Assembly (NCBI RefSeq): GCF_902713615.1
Contig: NC_052163.1
Location: 23,012,248 to 23,076,247, forward strand
Length of the DNA: 64,000 nucleotides
Reading direction: 5' to 3'
From: Scyliorhinus canicula
Lineage: Eukaryota
A program made the position numbers and the translations under genes. Under the pieces are notes generated by a model. That model was not told the origin of the DNA. It worked only from the letters and a program-made list of their open reading frames with translations, and did not search any database. Shown piece after piece: positions 7,071 through 53,770 of this stretch (positions are counted from its first letter, which is position 1; every line of letters begins with the position of its first letter).

Positions 7071-7302
7071 AAAAATGTGAAATTTTGTGGCATAGTTCTA
7101 TTAGCTATATACTGGGTGTTCTGATTTCTCTTTAAATGTTAATAGTCCCCAACAGCGTCGTAACAACTTGAATAGGGAACAGTTCTTAAACCTACTAAGT
7201 TTGTTAATATTATACTGTACATTGAAACTAAGTTTCACAATGGTATTCTTAATTAAATTTCTATTGGTTATTTTATTAATGAATGTTTCTTTTCTAAAAC
7301 AG

Positions 7303-7431
7303 GAGTAGGTTTCTCTCTCAGCTTCCTTCCCACAGTCACAATCCTCTCCCAGTACTTTGATAAATATCGCTCTCTTGTCATTGCTGTGGCATCCACAGGA
7401 GAATGTTTTGCTACCTTCGTTTTTGCACCCG
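7303..7431 (+). CDS. SLC16A6: Monocarboxylate transporter 7 (MCT7), internal coding exon (129 bp, phase 1-1)
   Basis: Acceptor ttttctaaaacag|GA and donor CCCG|gtaagt. Translates (G)[42 protein letters not shown](A), matching the SLC16A6-type segment [13 protein letters not shown]...[10 protein letters not shown]. Not in the ORF track. Confidence 0.95.
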
Positions 7432-8099
7432 GTAAGTGCTATAAATTGACATTATAGCCTTTAAATTGAAAATTCTGAGAATTGTTGGCTGATAAGTGCA
7501 CTTCTTGCCAAGTATTTATTGTCCTTCACTGCATTGCTGTAACTTGCAAAGATGAAGACTTATTTTATTTTAACTTCAATCATAATTGTTTTTAGGCCAG
7601 ATGAATTACTACTGGTAGTACCACCACCACCACTTCTAAAAATTTACTTAACCAAGCAACGTTTCAAACACCTTTGCATGGATTTACAATTGGATTAGTT
7701 TTACATTCATCTAAAACTGCATTATTCACTGATACGTGTTGATCACCTGTGACTTTGAGCAGGAGTCAATACCAAGTGTATACTATAACTGGTACAATAA
7801 AGATGACAAACTCACCTCACAGAATAATAAAAAAGTCATTTAAAAATGTTGGTTAATTAACTGCAGATATTTTAATCTTGATCTTCCAAAACATATACAA
7901 TTTAGGAACTGTCCTCTTGGATTGAGGTAGGGTGGGAGAGAGAGGTACGGAATTTGTAGGCGTAAATAATCTATTATTAGGAACAGGACAATTAAGTATT
8001 TACCAGAGGGCCACCACTGATTTGCAACAGGCAAGTAATGTTCATCAAGCCGAGTTGATTTTTTGGCAGAGATCACTAATGTAGTTGACCATTGATGTT

Positions 8100-13369: not shown

Positions 13370-15994
13370 TACCAACAACATAGGTAAACAGCGACGAGGT
13401 GCGAAAAGCAGAATATAGGGAATTGGGAAAAAATTTGAGAAGTCGGACCTCAAAGATAGCGATCTCAGGATTACTACAAGTGCCATGTGCTAGTCAGAGT
13501 AGAAATAGCAGGATATGTCGGATGAATATGTGGCTGAAGAGATGGTTTTCAGATTCCTGGGGCATTGGGACCGGTTCTGGGGGAAGTGGGACATGTAGAA
13601 ACTGGACGGGTTACACACTGGCAGGACCAGGACTGACTGATGTTTGGGGGGGGGGGGGGGGGGGGGGGGGGCTTGCTAGACCGGTTGGGGAGGGTTTAAA
13701 ATAATACAATAGGGATGGGGAACCTACGTAAAGATTCAGAGCAGGGGGAATCAAGAACAAGAGAAAAATACAGCAAGGAGAATAAGAAAAGTGATAGGCA
13801 GAGAAATCAAGGACCTGTAACGACACTGTATAAAAATAGTAGGGACATGACAAGGAACGTCGAAAGGACTAGCCTTAAGGTTTTGTACCTGAATGTGTGG
13901 AGCATTCAAACTAAAATGGCTGAATTAGTTGTGCAGATAAATGTAAAGCGGTATGATGGATGACAGAGACATGGCTCCAAGGTGACCAAGGATGGGAACT
14001 AAACATTGAGGGCTATTAGCTTTTAGGGAGGACAGACAGAAAGGAAAAAATGGTGTAGTTGCATTGTTGATTAAAGAAGATATTGATACAATATGGAGGA
14101 AATATGTGGAATCATCTGTATGGGTCGAATTAAGAAACACTAAGGGGCAAAAAAAAACATTCGTAGATATGGTGCACAGACCACCAAACTACAGTGGCAA
14201 TGTTGGGAATAATATTAGACAGGAAATCAGAGATATATGTGATAAAGGATCATTTGTGATTATTTTATTTTTGAATGTATTCATTTGTGGGATGTGGGTG
14301 GCGCTGGTTAGCCCAGCATTTATTGCTCTTCCCTAAGGGTGACTTTAATCGGCATATAGATTGGGTGAGTCAAATTAATCATGATACAATAGCGAAAACA
14401 TTTCTGGAGTGTATATGGGATGGTTTTCTGGACCAATATTTTGAGGAACTAACAAGGGAACAGGCCATCTTGGACTGGGTGTTGTGCAATGAGAAAGAAT
14501 TAGTTATCAATCTAGTTGTGAGTGAATCCTTGGTGATGAGTGACCATAAAATGATAGAATTCTTTATCATGGTGGACAGTGAGGTAGTCGATTCTGAGAC
14601 CAGGGTCTTGAACATCAATAACGGTAACGATGATGGTATGAAGCATGAGCTGGCTATGATGGACTGGGGAACATTACTGAAAGGAAGGGCAGCGGACAGG
14701 CAATGGCAGGCATTCAAGGAATGAAGAGATGAACTCCAAAAATTCTTTTTTCCTGTTTGGCGCAAGAGTAGAAAGGGAACTGTGACCAAACCATGGCTTA
14801 AATGGGAAATTAGAGATAGTATTAGATTCAAAGAAGAAGGATACAAGTTAGCAAGAAAAAGCAATAGACCTGAGGATTGGGAACAATTTAAAATTCAGCA
14901 AAGGGATTGATTAAGAAGGGGAAAATACAATATGAAAGTAAGTTAGCGGGGAACACAAAAACTGACTGTAAAAGTTGCTACAGGTATGTAAAGAGAAAAA
15001 GATTGATAAAAAATAATGTAGGCCTCTTACAGTCTGAAGCGAGGGAATTCACAACGGGTAACAAAGAAATGGCTGAGGAACTAAATTAGTACTTTGCTTC
15101 TGTCTTCATAGAGGAAGACATGAATAATATAATGGAGATTCTAAGAAACACAAGTTTCAGTGAGTATCTGAAGGAAATTAGTGTTAGTAGCAAAATGGTT
15201 TGGGGAAATTAATAGGAACGAAGACGGATACATCTCCAGGGCCAGATAATGTTCATTCCAGAGTACTTGAGGAAGAGGCCTGAGAAATAGTAGATCCATT
15301 GGTGGCCATTTTCCAAAATTCCATGGACTCTGGAATGGTTCCTACAGATTGGAGGATAGCTAATATAACCCTGCTGTTCAAAAAGGGAGACAGAAAGAAA
15401 ACAGGGAACTACAGACCAATGAGCCTAACATTGGTAGTAGGGAAGTTGCTAGAGTCCATTACCAAGGATGTTATAGCACAGCATTTTGAAAGCAGTGGTG
15501 TAATCAAATAAATTCAGCATGGATTTATGAAAGGGAATCATGCTTGACAAATCTACTAGAATTCTTTGAAGGTGTAACTAGCAGAGTTCACCAGGGTGAA
15601 CCGGTGGATGTGGTTTATTTAGACTTTCAGATGGCTTTCAGCAAGGTCTCACATAGCAGATTGCTATGAAAGTTAAAGTGCATGGGATTGCAGGTAGTGT
15701 CTTGAGATGGATAGAAAGCTGGTTAGCAGACAGGAAGCAAAAAATTGGAATAAATGGGTCTTTTTCCACTTGGTAGGCAGTGACTAGTGGGGCTCTGTGC
15801 TAGGGCCCCTACTGTTCACATTATATATTAATGATTTGGACGAGGGAACTACATGTATTATCTCCAAATTTACAGATGACTCAAAGTTGGGTAGGAGGGT
15901 GAGCTGTGAGAAGGATGCAGAGATGCTTCAGTGGGATTGGACAGACTGAGTGAGTGGGCATATGCATAACAGATGCAGTACAATGTGGATAAAT

Positions 15995-17235: not shown

Positions 17236-17456
17236 GTCTTTTCAAAATTTGGAGTACTGCCTGGGTCAATTTCAAAGCTAAGATTGGTGGATTTTTGTAC
17301 GGTAGGGGTACTTAGTCCCATTTCTCGAAGATGGGAAAATAATGTTAAGATGCATATCAGCCATGATATTACTGATTGGCTCTCCGTTTCTATGATCAGG
17401 TGCACACAGAGAATAAGAAATGTAATCCAGTAATGCAATGTTTTGCTCTCTTTTAG

Positions 17457-18269
17457 CTTTTACATTACTGAAGAATCATCTTGGATGGAAAAATTGTCTC
17501 CTAGTCATAGGTGCACTGCAGCTAAACATTGTTGTGTGTGGCGCATTACTTCGGCCACTTATCATCAGAAAAACGGAGAAAAAAACAGTGGAACCAGTGA
17601 GTGTGCCAATGGAAACCAAGTATATGCTGGAGAATGAGGAAACATGCATCTCTGTAGAGTCTGTGGACTCAGGAGTGGAATCTTTATCTACCTCACGTGA
17701 TCACTTAAATAATAAAAAGTGTACAACAAATAATGTTCACAAAGAAAAGTTTCAAATGCTTCTAGATAAGAAGCCAGAACCACAGGATCAACCAAAGTTG
17801 CTTGACTTTTCAATTCTAAAGGACAAAAGCTTCATTTTTTATTCACTTTTTGGACTATTTGCCACTTTCGGTTTCTTCGCACCTCACCTTTATGTGATTC
17901 CTCTCAGCATTAGCCTTGGTGTTGACGAGTGGGCAGCATACATGCTATCTGCTATGGCAATTATGGAGGTGTTTGGTAGGTTGGCAAGTGGCTGTGTCCT
18001 AAACAAGCAGCCTATACGGAAGATTTACATTGAACTGATCTGTACAAGCCTACTGAGTATAGTGTTGTTGTGCTTTCCATTCACAAGAGGATTCTGGAGC
18101 CTTGTTACATGCAGCATGCTGTATGGATTCATGTTTGGCACTGTGGCCAGTATTCATATTCCAATGTTGGCAGAAGATGATGTTGTTGGAATTGAGAAGA
18201 TGTCATCTGCTGTCGGAATTTACATCTTTATACAGAGCTTTTCAGGACTTGCTGGGCCGCCTATTGGAG
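17457..18269 (+). CDS. SLC16A6: MCT7 large internal coding exon (813 bp, phase 1-1; GW..L...G.LQLNI...GALLRP, central loop, C-terminal TM helices)
   Basis: Acceptor ctcttttag|CT and donor GGAG|gtattt. Lies within ORF 17438..18394, with motifs LQLNIVVCGALLRP, KLLDFSILKDKSF, GLFATFGFFAP, HIPMLAEDDVVGIEKMSSAVG and GLAGPPIG. Phases join both neighbouring exons. Confidence 0.96.
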
Positions 18270-19774
18270 GTATTTTTGTTTTTGATTTCATTATCATGGA
18301 GTCAAGTTTCAAATTTACGTACGTATTTGCATTTCATTTCAGTGAAAGTGAAATGAGGTTGCACTTAAATGCAGTTAATTTGATCCAAGAATAACCATCT
18401 GGCTTTACAGTAGCTAATTCTCCATCATATGATACTTTTGCAAAAAAAAAAAGGTGTGCATTTAGCCTTAAACAATGCTCCAAAAGAGCAAAATGGTTAA
18501 AAATTCAGAATATACGCTGTTCAAAAATGCTAACGTATTCTGCAAGAAAATCAACAAAATTTGTAAGCCCACATTGGACAAGTAGGTAAGTTTACAGTAC
18601 CAGTGTCATCAAATTAATGTTGTACATTTGGTTTTGAAAAGTTTTAACTATCATTAGGAGATAATAATTTTTTTTATTTTAGCTTCTACTATTTTACTTA
18701 GGATTTTCACAGTGCTGGTGACCTTTTTTTCATCTCCTCATGTCAGTCACCCACTCTTCCAATCCTGCTGCTTTTAAGTCTCTCTTGCCAGCATATCTTT
18801 CCATCTGATAGACCTTCCCCTTCTTCCTGCAAATCTCCAACTTGCCTCAACACATATCCTTTCCGCAACAGATGACCATGCCATTTCAATTTCTTCTCGG
18901 CGACATTCTTCAAATATTCCCATTATCTTCACTGATCCCCGATGTACTAATTCCTGTTATTGCCCTTTCTTGTCACTCCAAATATCCACCTCAGCAATCC
19001 TCATCTAATTAGCATCAAGTTGTCTCTTCTCTTGATGTTGTCCAAGTTTTTACATTATACAGCCAGGCTGATCTCAAAACTGTCCTGTCGATTCTTCCTT
19101 TCAGTCTCAAAGATACTTTCTCACATTACACTATGCTGCTCTATTTACAATTACTCCAACGAGAGCTAATCTTCTAATACTTCAATCTTCTACCACCACT
19201 AACCCCCAGGTACTTAAAACTACTCACTTTCTCCAGATCTTCCCCCATACACTAATATTCTTCCTTAGTCTCAAACTGACAGATCATATATTGGGTCTGC
19301 ACTGACCTTCACACACCTGTCTTCCAGTACTGTTCTTCAGATACTCAGACATGATCTCATCATTCCCACTACATCTGCAAACATCATTGACCACGGCGCT
19401 TCCTGTCTCACTTGCTTAGTTAGAATATCACTGACAATCATCTGCATGATGGGAATTATGTAAAACTATCCGACTTGCAAATTCTTAGGCCTTTTACAAT
19501 ACACGTTCTGCAAACTGTATAGTGTGGCTCAGTTATTAAGCTTCCAGAATTAAATTTATGTAACCTGTGTGAAACCATTATTTCAGTTGCAAATAATTGC
19601 AATTGGTGCAAATAAAAGTCCATGTTGATCCAGTAGGAATTTTTCAGTACTTAAATCTTAAAGCTTTACAATGTTAACCAAGCTAACTACCCCACTGGTT
19701 CCTTGGGAAGAAAGCTCAACAGCATGAAAAAGTGTAATTTAGTAACAATTGGAGCCTTAAATTCCAGCATGTGT

Positions 19775-20000
19775 GGGCGGCACAGTATCCCAGTGGTTTG
19801 CACTGCTGCCTCATGGCACCAAGGATTTGGGTTCGATCCTGGCCCTGGGTCACTGTCCGTGTGGCATTTGCACATTCTTCCTGTGTCTGTGTGGGTCTCA
19901 CCCCCACAACCCAAAGATGTGCAGTGTAGGTGGATTGGCCACGCTAAATTGCCCCTAAATTGAGAAAAAAAAAAATTGGGTACTCTGAATTTATATTTTT
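19775..20000 (+). mobile_element. V-SINE tail type D with 17-bp TSD
   Basis: taaattccagcatgtgt (19758-19774) and taaattccagcttgtgt (20001-20017) flank the element. Confidence 0.92.
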
Positions 20001-20698
20001 TAAATTCCAGCTTGTGTCCCAGTAGGCAAGGGTTGCAACGCAAAGGTTTCCTAAGTCAGACATTTTTTTGGGAGTGGTTATGCTTGTAATGAAATTGACC
20101 ACAAACATTTTAGCAAATGGATAAATGCTAATAACTTGAAAAATGTGCTTCTATTTCCAATGCACTAATTTCCCAGTAAATCTATGAACGTTTACACTTA
20201 CCACTGTAGCACTGATACGCACACTAATGTTTATTTGCATAATATACTTCACTTTATAACTTCACCCCTGTACCATCTATAGAAACCGAATTCAAATAAC
20301 ATTACTAGTAGTTCCTTGCATATAGTGCCTTCCAGACCCCCAGTGTATGAAACATTTCAACTGCTTGCATGACAATTTAATGAGTATGCTGAAATCTGTA
20401 AATAGTCCATCTTTATCTGATGCCTAAATTGATCTAATTTTATCAAAACTGCACCAGAATAGATCTTTGTGGCAGAAAGTCCTGCACTTCAAGCCAGAGT
20501 TACAGTTTAATGCACTTGAGGAAGCTTTGCATGATTCAAAGGGTCTTTCCAAAACCAAAGGAGTTTAAATATCAAGCTTCTGACTTTAACTGCTGGTGTG
20601 ACATGATGTTTCGGCTACCACTTTTTCCTCCAGACTACTGAAAAAGTATTATGGATGTAAAAAGATGAGAATTAGATTGACTTTTTTTTTGTTTTCAG

Positions 20699-21114
20699 GT
20701 TGGCTCGTGGATATTACAGGTCAGAATTATGGATCTGCCTTCTTCTTTTGTGGTATTGGCATGTGTTTGGGTTCATTTTTTCTGGCATTGGTCCAACCAT
20801 CTAAAAAAGGGTTCTGTCAGAGAAAACAACCTCTGGAGATTGATCGGCAACAGGCATTACAGGAGGATCTCAAAATTGTTCAGGATGTGCCTGGTCAGAG
20901 AAAACAACCCCTGGAGATTGATCGGCAACAGGCATTACAGGAGGATCTCAAAATTGTTCAGGATGTGCCTGGTCAGAGAAAACAACCTCTGGAGATTGAT
21001 CGGCAACAGGCATTACAAGAGGACCTAAAAATTGTTCAGGATGTGCCTGAAGACTTCGTAGAAACAGACTTGAAACCAGAAAGTTTACAGAATCAGTTTC
21101 AAAGTAACGCTTGA
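20699..21114 (+). CDS. SLC16A6: MCT7 terminal coding exon (last TM helix plus cytoplasmic tail with 3x26-aa repeat), stop TGA at 21112-21114
   Basis: Acceptor ttttttttgttttcag|GT. Translates (G)WLVDITGQNYGSAFFFCGIGMCLGSFFLALVQPSKKGFC...QDVPEDFVETDL..., corresponding to the GLLVD...QDIPEDFLEMDL tail recalled for vertebrate MCT7. Confidence 0.94.
20816..21049 (+). repeat. Coding tandem repeat, 3 x 78 bp (QRKQPLEIDRQQALQEDLKIVQDVP[G/E])
   Basis: In-frame units begin at codons 20818, 20896 and 20974, with only four variable internal sites among the copies. Confidence 0.98.
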
Positions 21115-52782: not shown

Positions 52783-52959
52783 CTTGTATCTCTCCTTAAT
52801 GTCAAAGTTAATGGCACACTGCAGCTTTCTTAGGCAAATAGGGCAAAGATCAATTGGTCGTCGGTCAGACTCCTCTAAATGGTTGGAACCTTGCATTACA
52901 CATTGCAACCACTGGCAGTGATGCATGCCGAAAATGTGTCCAATTTCATGAGTTAAAGT
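52783..52959 (-). CDS. AMZ2: Archaemetzincin-2 catalytic exon (177 bp, phase 0-0) with zinc-binding motif
   Basis: Acceptor tattttcag|ACT and donor AAG|gtagag. Translates TLTHEIGHIFGMHHCQWLQCVMQGSNHLEESDRRPIDLCPICLRKLQCAINFDIKERYK: HEXXHXXGXXH followed by C-X4-C-X-M-X16-C-X2-C, the archaemetzincin signature. Confidence 0.97.
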
Positions 52960-53770
52960 CTGAAAATACAGCAAATTTTATTTTACTGGAAGTGACACAA
53001 CAACCTGAAATTGAAATGAAATGAAATGAATGAAATAAAATTGTTTTTAAAGAATCAAATTTTTAAAAAAAATTAATAGAGCAATGCTATGTTCAGCTAT
53101 CCATTCTGAAATATGAAAACAATAACTATTTTCAGACCTTTTTAAAGCTCTATCTCTCCACTTTAGCAGTCTCAATCCAGCATACATTTGTATTCTCTAA
53201 AAATGTAATGCAGAATATACTTCTGGTGCAATGGTATCACTCAGAGATTGCATTTGTTTAAATCTCATCTGCTTCTGAACTCATGGATGTAAGGGTTTAT
53301 TTATCTATTTTTGGTGGCATTAGTCACAAGGTAAATTTGACCAGGATATCAGGAGAACTTCCATGTTCTTTGAATACTGCCACAGAATATTTTAAATCCA
53401 TCTAAAAAGAAGCCTCAATTTATTGTTATCCCTATCCAAAGATGTGCAGGTTAGGTGGATTGGCCATGCTAAATTACCCCTAAGTGTCCAAAGGTTAGAT
53501 GGGGTTACAGGGATAGGGTGGGGATTGGATCTGTGTCAAATGATCGGAGCAGACTCGATGGGCCGAATGGCCTCCTTCTGCACCGTAGGATTATATGATA
53601 AACATTCATAAAGAAATGCGAACAGCATGGTCAAGATAACTAGAAACAGCTAATAAACTTCCCTCAATACAAACGTTTACAGGCATTTTCACGTAATTAA
53701 CTCAAAATTCTAAAACTATGAGGAGGAATTTCTTCAGCCAGACGTGAATCTGTCAAATCAATTGCCGCAG

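What the first reader, a model, noticed from the sequence alone, without database searches (positions are those of the whole stretch)
20816..21049. Triplicated 26-aa module in the MCT7 cytoplasmic tail, diverging only at silent sites
Seen: three in-frame 78-bp units encode identical QRKQPLEIDRQQALQEDLKIVQDVP, adding 52 aa ahead of the conserved EDF.E.DL motif. The four internal differences are all synonymous (CCT/CCC in unit 2; CAG/CAA, GAT/GAC and CTC/CTA in unit 3). Known: MCT7 is a ketone-body exporter in zebrafish liver, elasmobranchs rely heavily on ketone bodies, and MCT C-tails carry regulatory and sorting interactions. As I recall it, mammalian MCT7 has no such repeat. Inference: a lineage-specific coding VNTR under purifying selection that may multiply a binding or regulatory site. 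Four sites is a small sample, and three cluster within 10 nt.
Basis: partly seen in the sequence, partly recalled or inferred. Interest (0 to 1): 0.75.

Follow-up and report, generated by a model that had tools for sequence, protein, structure and literature searches.

The report
Catshark MCT7 tail-linker triplication
The small-spotted catshark's MCT7 (SLC16A6) transporter gene carries a real, transcribed, in-frame triplication of a 26-residue stretch in its cytoplasmic tail; it is confined to the genus Scyliorhinus and copies a fast-evolving spacer, so it is a tidy but probably low-impact coding repeat.

Summary
Window 20816-21049 is a perfect 3.0-copy, 78-bp, indel-free tandem array in the last coding exon of SLC16A6/MCT7. 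Its four differences are all third-position and synonymous.

The window is Scyliorhinus canicula. RefSeq XP_038633289.1 (576 aa) matches the window's two main exons.

- **Lineage:** S. torazame has two units in two independent assemblies. The 15 other shark, ray and skate species listed have one, and the chimaera, coelacanth, ray-finned fish and tetrapods show no repeat.
- **Not an artefact:** spliced transcript contigs from independent studies carry unit-specific words. In two runs their depths fit the U1-U2-U3 order.
- **Polymorphism:** two other runs lack the unit-2 variant and hold a junction haplotype absent from the reference. S. canicula therefore has at least two alleles; one DNA run looks like two copies.
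- **What is copied:** the whole linker between TM12 and the near-invariant P[ED]DF[LI]ExD[LI] motif. This is the least conserved part of the tail across vertebrates, and the motif itself is not copied.
- **Selection:** 4/4 synonymous gives P about 0.002-0.009 under neutrality, or 0.04-0.09 if the three clustered changes were one event.

The most likely reading is a genus-specific coding VNTR that lengthens a helix-prone spacer from 25 to 77 residues. A multiplied binding site is unsupported. Interest is modest.

The parts
7303..7431 (+). Internal coding exon of slc16a6/MCT7 (aa ~126-168 of XP_038633289.1). The acceptor AG is at 7301-7302 and the donor GT at 7432-7433.
   Evidence: tblastn of P0122 against the window; sequence read. 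The exons for aa 1-123 lie upstream of the window.
17457..18269 (+). Large coding exon of MCT7. It encodes part of the MFS transmembrane core and the long cytoplasmic loop between its two halves (aa ~169-439).
   Evidence: Pfam MFS_1 E=7.7e-17. 96% identity to S. torazame MCT7-like, with more than 500 vertebrate MCT7 hits. Splice sites read. The exon-exon junction 18269>20699 is seen in transcript contigs (table 7).
17666..17683 (+). DSGVES in the cytoplasmic loop. It matches the beta-TrCP phospho-degron consensus DSGx(2-4)[ST] shown to act in human SLC16A6 (DSGVELT, residues 239-245).
   Evidence: Sequence; human data in bioRxiv 10.1101/2024.09.30.615192. Not part of the repeat.
20699..21114 (+). 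Last coding exon up to and including the stop codon (TGA 21112-21114). It encodes TM12, the triplicated linker, the conserved acidic motif and the C-terminus.
   Evidence: Translation; 100% tblastn match to P0122 aa 439-576; spliced contigs in X1, X9 and X12.
20816..20893 (+). Repeat unit 1 (T at column 17; G, T, C at columns 47, 53, 56).
   Evidence: The contig joining the left flank to a T17 unit is present in all four runs laid (records 2, 9, 13, 17).
20894..20971 (+). Repeat unit 2 (C at column 17, position 20910). It differs from unit 1 by one synonymous change.
   Evidence: The unit-2-specific contig (junction plus C17, 20880-20939) is present in X1 and X9. It is absent from X4 and X12.
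20972..21049 (+). Repeat unit 3 (A, C, A at columns 47, 53, 56). It is the copy that aligns with the single linker of other species.
   Evidence: Contigs running from unit 3 into the 3' flank are present in all four runs (records 8, 12, 16, 24).
21049..21072 (+). EDFVETDL, the conserved acidic motif P[ED]DF[LI]ExD[LI]. It is not duplicated.
   Evidence: In the 41-sequence vertebrate alignment P555, D557, F558 and D562 are at least 90% conserved.

Best explanation
This is a genus-specific, in-frame tandem duplication (a coding minisatellite or VNTR) in the last coding exon of catshark slc16a6/MCT7.

A 78-bp segment encodes the whole juxtamembrane linker, from the Gln after the Cys that follows TM12 to the Pro before the conserved EDF motif. 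It was duplicated once in an ancestor of Scyliorhinus, giving the more diverged unit 3 and the two copies seen in S. torazame. It was duplicated again on the S. canicula line, giving units 1 and 2, which differ at one site. The likely mechanism is unequal exchange or replication slippage; that step is inferred.

The array is spliced into mRNA and translated in frame. It lengthens the linker between the transporter core and the conserved acidic P[ED]DF[LI]ExD[LI] motif from 25 to 77 residues. Each extra unit is polar, weakly helix-prone and carries net charge -1.

Its most likely effect is that of a tolerated spacer extension, which places the conserved tail motif and the C-terminus further from the membrane. 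Selection keeps the frame and disfavours residue changes, but no new binding site is created. Copy number or sequence still varies among S. canicula individuals.

Shown: the structure, uniqueness, expression, phylogenetic distribution and allelic variation. Inferred: the order of duplications, the mechanism, and the spacer-only function.
For: - **Array anatomy and reading frame:**
- **Gene identity:** MFS_1 domain and best hits to vertebrate MCT7. S. canicula XP_038633289.1 (P0122) matches the last exon at 100% and the large exon end to end. An AMZ-type Peptidase_M54 exon lies nearby at 52819-52965 on the minus strand, and the S. torazame locus overlaps a Peptidase_M54 gene.
- **Distribution:** two units in S. 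torazame in both GCA_047496885.1 and GCA_003427355.1. One unit in Mustelus, Cetorhinus, Carcharodon, Heterodontus, Rhincodon, Heptranchias, Pristis, Pristiophorus, Chiloscyllium, Leucoraja, Rhinoraja, Amblyraja, Mobula, Hemitrygon and Narcine. None in bony vertebrates.
- **Uniqueness:** one locus in the genome.
- **Expression and reality:** 20 rows from 10 studies hold the stretch. In X1, X9 and X12 the contigs continue upstream into the end of exon 17457-18269, so they are spliced (table 7).
- **Copy order:** X1 and X9 hold all unit-specific pieces. Depths relative to the left flank are about 2x for the T17 piece, 1x for the C17 piece, 2x for the G47 piece and 1x for the junction-plus-T17 piece, as U1-U2-U3 predicts (table 8).
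- **Variation:** X4 and X12 have zero depth over 20864-20907 and hold a 92-nt contig with T17, G47, the junction and T17 again. That haplotype does not exist in the reference. X4 depths (4.8 / 7.8 / 4.6 / 4.75) fit two copies. X12 depths (34.6 / 133 / 74 / 32) fit three copies with T17 in unit 2.
- **Linker variability:** the linker is 44-84% identical among other elasmobranch genera and 8-28% beyond them, while the adjacent motif is nearly invariant.
- **Structure:** helices at 483-500 and 510-524 with block-mean pLDDT of roughly 50-75; the rest of the tail is below 50. Hydrophobic moment is 0.21, no higher than shuffles.
- **Constraint:** 4/4 synonymous, P=0.002-0.009.
Against: - No nucleotide sequence of S. 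torazame or any other catshark could be obtained. Orthology of units, the order of duplications and a real dN/dS are therefore untested.
- The copy-number inference within S. canicula rests on depths of k=31 Logan contigs, which the tool itself calls a rough figure. No read spans the array.
- All five units in the two species have identical residues, and all four differences are silent. That is equally what a functional module would show, so 'spacer only' is a judgement and not a result.
- AlphaFold2 confidence in the tail is low, so the structural description is weak.
Confidence: 0.68

Rival explanations
1. Functional multiplication: each 26-residue unit is a binding or regulatory module. Having two or three copies raises avidity or adds regulatory input to MCT7 in catsharks, and purifying selection maintains it.
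For: All four differences are synonymous (P 0.002-0.009). The five units of S. canicula and S. torazame are identical in residues, while the flanks within the same exon differ at three residues plus one indel. The linker keeps a recognisable pattern (QRKQPLExDxQxxLQxDLxIxQDVP) among sharks and rays. Units 1 and 2 are predicted helical.
Against: The copied segment is the least conserved part of the tail across vertebrates, and the truly conserved motif is left single. No Pfam family reaches its cut-off on the tail. The unit is not amphipathic. Copy number differs between sister species and probably within S. canicula, which argues against a tuned number. The sample is four sites, three of them within 10 nt. 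No partner is known for the MCT7 tail in the papers read.
Confidence: 0.2
2. Fully neutral young duplication: the extra units are under no constraint of their own. The silent-only pattern would then come from chance plus one clustered multi-nucleotide event.
For: If the three changes within 10 nt of unit 3 are one event, only two independent events remain, and 2/2 synonymous has P=0.04-0.09. The linker evolves fast between genera. There is allelic variation within the species.
Against: Treated as independent, 4/4 synonymous is unlikely (P<0.01). The duplication is shared with S. torazame and so is not very young, yet no residue has changed in any of the five units.
Confidence: 0.09
3. Assembly artefact: the true gene has one unit (or fewer than three), and the reference array was inflated by mis-assembly.
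For: No single read or contig spanning all 234 bp was seen, because the contigs break inside the repeat. One low-coverage DNA run looks like two copies.
Against: Three distinct unit contexts are present in contigs of independent studies at the depth ratios expected for three units: flank plus T17, junction plus C17, and junction plus T17 followed by A47/C53/A56 (X1 and X9). Every run laid holds at least one unit-to-unit junction. S. torazame shows two units in two separate assemblies.
Confidence: 0.03

Closest known systems
Vertebrate MCT7 / SLC16A6 (human SLC16A6, zebrafish slc16a6a)
   Same: MFS/SLC16 core. 56-61% identity to the tetrapod and bony-fish MCT7 hits over the large exon. A DSGxxS degron-like site in the loop, as in human DSGVELT. 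A conserved C-tail motif P[ED]DF[LI]ExD[LI]. An AMZ-type neighbour gene.
   Different: All other MCT7 proteins examined have one linker of 17-35 residues between TM12 and the motif. S. canicula has three identical copies (77 residues) and S. torazame two. The substrate in sharks is untested. The literature gives beta-hydroxybutyrate (zebrafish), taurine (mammals, PMC8980330) and tyrosine (preprint PMC13370447).
In-frame coding minisatellites (VNTRs) in cytoplasmic segments of membrane proteins, such as the 48-bp repeat in the third cytoplasmic loop of human DRD4 (from general knowledge, not tested here)
   Same: Head-to-tail units whose length is a multiple of three, inside a cytoplasmic and poorly conserved segment. 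The frame is kept, and copy number varies between close relatives and apparently between individuals.
   Different: There are only one to three copies here. The units are identical at the protein level and nearly identical in DNA. No phenotype or binding function is known.
Regulatory and sorting C-tails of MCT1 and MCT4 (basolateral sorting signals, acidic clusters; from general knowledge)
   Same: A cytosolic C-terminal tail of an SLC16 transporter. Mammalian MCT7 is also basolateral and works with basigin/embigin (PMC8980330).
   Different: I did not compare the unit with MCT1 or MCT4 tail sequences. No function has been mapped to any MCT7 tail in the papers read.

Membership tests
SLC16A6 / MCT7 orthologue | Major-facilitator (MFS_1) transmembrane core | tested here: met
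   Pfam PF07690 E=7.7e-17 on the exon 17438-18331 translation. AlphaFold2 models the transmembrane helices of the core at pLDDT 70-92.
SLC16A6 / MCT7 orthologue | Closest relatives are MCT7 of other vertebrates, not other SLC16 members | tested here: met
   Every one of the top 120 hits that carries a functional name is MCT7, MOT7 or slc16a6(b). The protein clusters at 90% identity with S. canicula and S. torazame 'monocarboxylate transporter 7-like'.
SLC16A6 / MCT7 orthologue | Conserved C-tail motif P[ED]DF[LI]ExD[LI] | tested here: met
   PEDFVETDL is encoded at 21046-21072. P555, D557, F558 and D562 are at least 90% conserved in 41 sequences.
SLC16A6 / MCT7 orthologue | Conserved gene neighbourhood (AMZ2-type metalloprotease beside SLC16A6; the human arrangement is recalled from memory) | tested here: inconclusive
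   A Peptidase_M54 exon lies at 52819-52965 on the minus strand, and a Peptidase_M54 gene overlaps the S. torazame locus. The human arrangement was not checked with a tool.
SLC16A6 / MCT7 orthologue | Transport of beta-hydroxybutyrate, taurine or tyrosine | not testable with these tools
   Needs expression and flux assays.
Coding VNTR / in-frame minisatellite | Head-to-tail copies of a unit of at least 10 bp whose length is a multiple of three, with an open frame | tested here: met
   78 bp x 3.0 copies, no indels, frame open.
Coding VNTR / in-frame minisatellite | Copy number differs between close relatives | tested here: met
   3 in S. canicula, 2 in S. torazame (two assemblies), 1 in the 15 other shark, ray and skate species listed.
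Coding VNTR / in-frame minisatellite | Copy number differs between individuals of one species | tested here: inconclusive
   X4 and X12 carry a T17-junction-T17 haplotype absent from the reference and lack the C17 unit. X4 depths fit two copies and X12 depths fit three. No read spans the array.
Coding VNTR / in-frame minisatellite | Present in mature mRNA | tested here: met
   Contigs of X1, X9 and X12 join exon end 18269 to 20699 and run into the repeat (tables 7 and 8).
Multiplied short linear motif or binding module | The unit contains a motif conserved across orthologues | tested here: not met
   Linker identity to S. canicula is 8-28% outside elasmobranchs and 44-84% among other elasmobranch genera. 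That is lower than the transmembrane core and similar to the variable loop.
Multiplied short linear motif or binding module | The unit matches a described domain or motif family | tested here: inconclusive
   No Pfam hit reaches its cut-off: there is only a 17.6-bit coiled-coil hit against a cut-off of 27. No motif library such as ELM was available. My own reading found no [DE]xxxL[LI] site.

The most novel reading that the evidence does not exclude
The linker copy number (1, 2 or 3) is a segregating, selected length polymorphism that tunes how far the conserved acidic tail motif sits from the membrane. Through that it would tune surface residence, polarity or partner binding of MCT7 in catshark tissues that export ketone bodies or the osmolyte taurine.
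Probability: 0.08. Interest if true: 0.55.

Novelty: new variant of a known kind. Interest (0 to 1): 0.3.

Why it matters
If the extra units matter, the genus offers a natural allelic series (1x, 2x and 3x linker) for asking what the conserved MCT7 tail motif does and how its distance from the membrane affects it. No paper read here addresses that question for any MCT7. If they do not matter, this is a clean example of how a disordered or helix-prone linker of a transporter tolerates a tripling in length. It is also a ready-made PCR marker that separates S. canicula from S. torazame and possibly distinguishes S. canicula alleles. Either way it does not change what is known about ketone-body physiology in sharks.

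Tried and rejected
- **S. torazame DNA:** I tried to fetch it for both assemblies, to align units across species and compute dN/dS. Both requests returned no DNA because the files are too large.
- **Tail fragments of 76-241 aa:** the word-index search found none at E<=0.001. That says nothing about longer proteins.
- **Exhaustive representative search with the last-exon protein:** it returned only TM12-level matches plus a few unrelated repeat proteins. The best, P0130, has 24-residue KKKSPLELAREQA-type repeats at 40% identity. I read this as a short chance resemblance multiplied by repeat-on-repeat scoring. P0130 has no Pfam family.
- **Amphipathic helix idea:** rejected. The hydrophobic moment is 0.21 against a shuffle mean of 0.24.
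- **Transposon or dispersed-repeat origin:** rejected, since there is one locus in the genome.
- **Divergence time for the two Scyliorhinus species:** looked for in a paper and not found, so no date is given.
- **The search of earlier findings:** returned nothing for this place or for these words.
- **VAPA, VAPB or FFAT in the SLC interactome paper:** none found in the text.

Full report
**Observation.**
- Window 20816-21049 is a perfect three-copy tandem array of a 78-bp unit, with no indels and 96% matches.
- Aligning the units shows four variable columns. Column 17 is T in units 1 and 3 and C in unit 2 (position 20910). Columns 47, 53 and 56 are G, T, C in units 1 and 2 and A, C, A in unit 3 (positions 21018, 21024, 21027).
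- The reading frame starts at 20818, so all four are third codon positions and silent. The three units encode the same QRKQPLEIDRQQALQEDLKIVQDVP.
- The Gly between units is made by the joint itself (CCT G|GT CAG).
- The array has no partial fourth copy, and the 311-bp stretch around it (20780-21090) matches only this one place in the 4.22-Gb genome.

**The gene.**
- The array lies in the last coding exon (20699-21114, stop at 21112-21114) of a plus-strand gene.
- Two further exons are in the window, at 17457-18269 and 7303-7431. The first 123 residues are encoded upstream of the window.
- The large exon carries an MFS_1 domain. Every one of its best 120 database matches that carries a functional name is vertebrate MCT7/SLC16A6.
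- The 90% identity cluster contains Scyliorhinus canicula XP_038633289.1 (576 aa). It matches the window's last exon at 100% and its large exon end to end, and it has the three units. The window is therefore S. canicula, and the repeat is already in the public annotation.
- A Peptidase_M54 (AMZ-type) exon lies at 52819-52965 on the minus strand. The S. torazame locus is overlapped by such a gene.

**Is it real and expressed?**
- Twenty rows from ten studies of one organism hold the stretch. All are stored as k=31 contigs, which must break inside a 78-bp repeat, and they do.
- In X1, X9 and X12 the contig entering the exon continues upstream into the last bases of exon 17457-18269. These are spliced transcripts.
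- X1 and X9 contain every context the reference predicts: left flank plus T17, junction plus C17 (unit 2 only), junction plus T17 (the start of unit 3), and the A47/C53/A56 piece running into the 3' flank.
- Relative to the flank, depths are about 2x for the pieces shared by two units and about 1x for the unique ones. In X1 the values are 261, 600, 208, 523, 281 and 184. That is what U1-U2-U3 predicts.
- A one-unit artefact is excluded. A full spanning read is still missing.

**Variation within the species.**
- X4 (a DNA run that includes intron) and X12 (spliced RNA) have zero depth over 20864-20907.
- Each holds a 92-nt contig that starts with T17, runs through G47 and the junction, and reaches another T17. 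No such haplotype exists in the reference.
- S. canicula therefore carries at least two alleles.
- X4 depths (flank 4.8, shared piece 7.8, junction piece 4.6, right 4.75) fit a two-copy allele. X12 depths (34.6, 133, 74, 32) fit three copies with T in unit 2.
- In the exon-only search, thirteen of nineteen holders show the same word share (0.82) as X12. That is compatible with the non-reference form being common, but it proves nothing.
- These depth readings are suggestive only. The tool warns that contig depth is a rough figure.

**Distribution.**
- S. torazame has two units in two independent assemblies (XP_072339603.1 and GCB73142.1).
- Mustelus, Cetorhinus, Carcharodon, Heterodontus, Rhincodon, Heptranchias, Pristis, Pristiophorus, Chiloscyllium, Leucoraja, Rhinoraja, Amblyraja, Mobula, Hemitrygon and Narcine each have one.
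- Chimaera, coelacanth, ray-finned fishes, amphibians, reptiles and mammals have no repeat.
- The duplication therefore arose after the catshark line left the other carcharhiniforms, and before or at the split of the two Scyliorhinus species.
- Unit 3 differs from units 1 and 2 at 3-4 of about 16 synonymous sites, and units 1 and 2 differ at one. This fits an older first duplication and a younger second one on the S. canicula line. A loss in S. torazame is not excluded, because no S. torazame DNA could be fetched.

**What was copied.**
- In a 41-species alignment the tail has three parts.
  - After TM12 comes a conserved LVRPxKxGLC.
  - Next is a linker of 17-35 residues that cannot be aligned outside elasmobranchs.
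  - Last is a nearly invariant P[ED]DF[LI]ExD[LI].
- The 78-bp unit is exactly the linker. The conserved motif stays single.
- Linker identity to S. canicula is 44-84% among the other elasmobranch genera and 8-28% beyond them. That is similar to the variable cytoplasmic loop and lower than the transmembrane core.
- AlphaFold2 on that alignment (mean pLDDT 62) models the core well but the tail poorly. It places helices at 483-500 and 510-524 (units 1 and 2, block-mean pLDDT roughly 50-75) and leaves unit 3 and the motif as low-confidence coil.
- The helix-prone stretch is not amphipathic: the hydrophobic moment is 0.21 against a shuffle mean of 0.24.
- Each unit has net charge -1.
- No Pfam family reaches its cut-off on the tail.

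**Selection.**
- Only 21-30% of random single-base changes in the unit would be silent.
- Four of four silent has P=0.002-0.009, or 0.006 given three transitions and one transversion.
- If the three changes within 10 nt of unit 3 were one event, the test falls to 2/2 with P=0.04-0.09.
- All five units of the two species are identical in residues, while the rest of the same exon differs at three residues and one indel. With so few sites that difference is not significant.
- Some constraint on the residues is likely. Its strength is unknown.

**Most likely reading.** This is a genus-specific coding VNTR that triples a fast-evolving, helix-prone spacer and moves the conserved acidic motif and C-terminus 52 residues further from the membrane. 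I judge a tolerated spacer extension more likely (about two in three) than a multiplied binding module (about one in five). My reasons are that the copied part is the least conserved part of the tail, that the conserved motif is not copied, and that copy number differs between sister species and probably within one. Nothing here tests function.

**Literature.**
- No paper found deals with the MCT7 tail or with shark MCT7.
- Human SLC16A6 is destabilised through a beta-TrCP phospho-degron, DSGVELT, in the loop (bioRxiv 10.1101/2024.09.30.615192).
- Mammalian MCT7 is a basolateral facilitative taurine transporter helped by basigin and embigin. The authors judged ketone bodies unlikely to be specific substrates, while noting the zebrafish beta-hydroxybutyrate work (PMC8980330).
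- A 2026 preprint proposes tyrosine import into melanosomes (PMC13370447).
- Elasmobranch tissues use ketone bodies heavily (PMC4810751). The link from that to this repeat is speculation.

**Verdict.** The finding is a new variant of a known kind, of modest interest.

Noticed in passing
window 17666-17683 (+): The MCT7 cytoplasmic loop encodes DSGVES. This matches the beta-TrCP degron consensus DSGx(2-4)[ST] shown to control human SLC16A6 stability (DSGVELT 239-245). D238, S239 and G240 are invariant or nearly so in the 41-species alignment, so the degron may be ancient.
   Followed up: partly
window 52819-52965 (-): An exon encoding the C-terminal part of a Peptidase_M54 (archaemetzincin, AMZ-type) domain (E=7.6e-14). 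In S. torazame a gene of this family is annotated on the opposite strand across the whole MCT7 locus.
   Followed up: partly
window 21049-21082 (+): S. canicula differs from every other elasmobranch examined just after the repeat. It has EDFVETDL where the others have L (or another residue) at the V position, and a single K in DLKPESLQ where all the others have DLKK followed by P, S or L.
   Followed up: no
window 21049-21072 (+): The near-invariant D-F-[LI]-E-x-D-[LI] core, preceded by acidic residues, resembles an FFAT-like (VAP-binding) motif as I recall that consensus. This is a lead from memory only. VAPA, VAPB and FFAT do not appear in the text of the SLC interactome paper.
   Followed up: partly
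window 7303-7431 (+): This 129-bp exon (43 aa, GVGFSLSF...FVFAP) is the one missing from several annotated 'isoforms' in other species, such as Cetorhinus X3, Heterodontus X2 and Amblyraja X2. Skipping it would remove part of the transmembrane core. I did not check whether such transcripts are real.
   Followed up: no
window 14275-15511 (+), intron: ORF fragments with weak matches, below the curated cut-offs, to endonuclease-reverse transcriptase (PF14529, E=0.0013) and RVT_1 (E=0.0048). This looks like a decayed LINE-type retroelement inside the MCT7 intron.
   Followed up: partly
window 20802-20845, run X9 record 18: A low-depth (2) contig over the left flank and the start of unit 1 carries one letter different from the reference. 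It could be a further allele, for example C at column 17 of the first unit, or an error.
   Followed up: no
protein P0130 (795 aa, unnamed, from the representative library): An unrelated protein with about seven tandem 24-residue repeats (KKKSPLELAREQA...DAPA) aligns to the catshark units at 40% identity with nearly the same period. It has no Pfam family, and the resemblance is probably chance amplified by repeats.
   Followed up: partly
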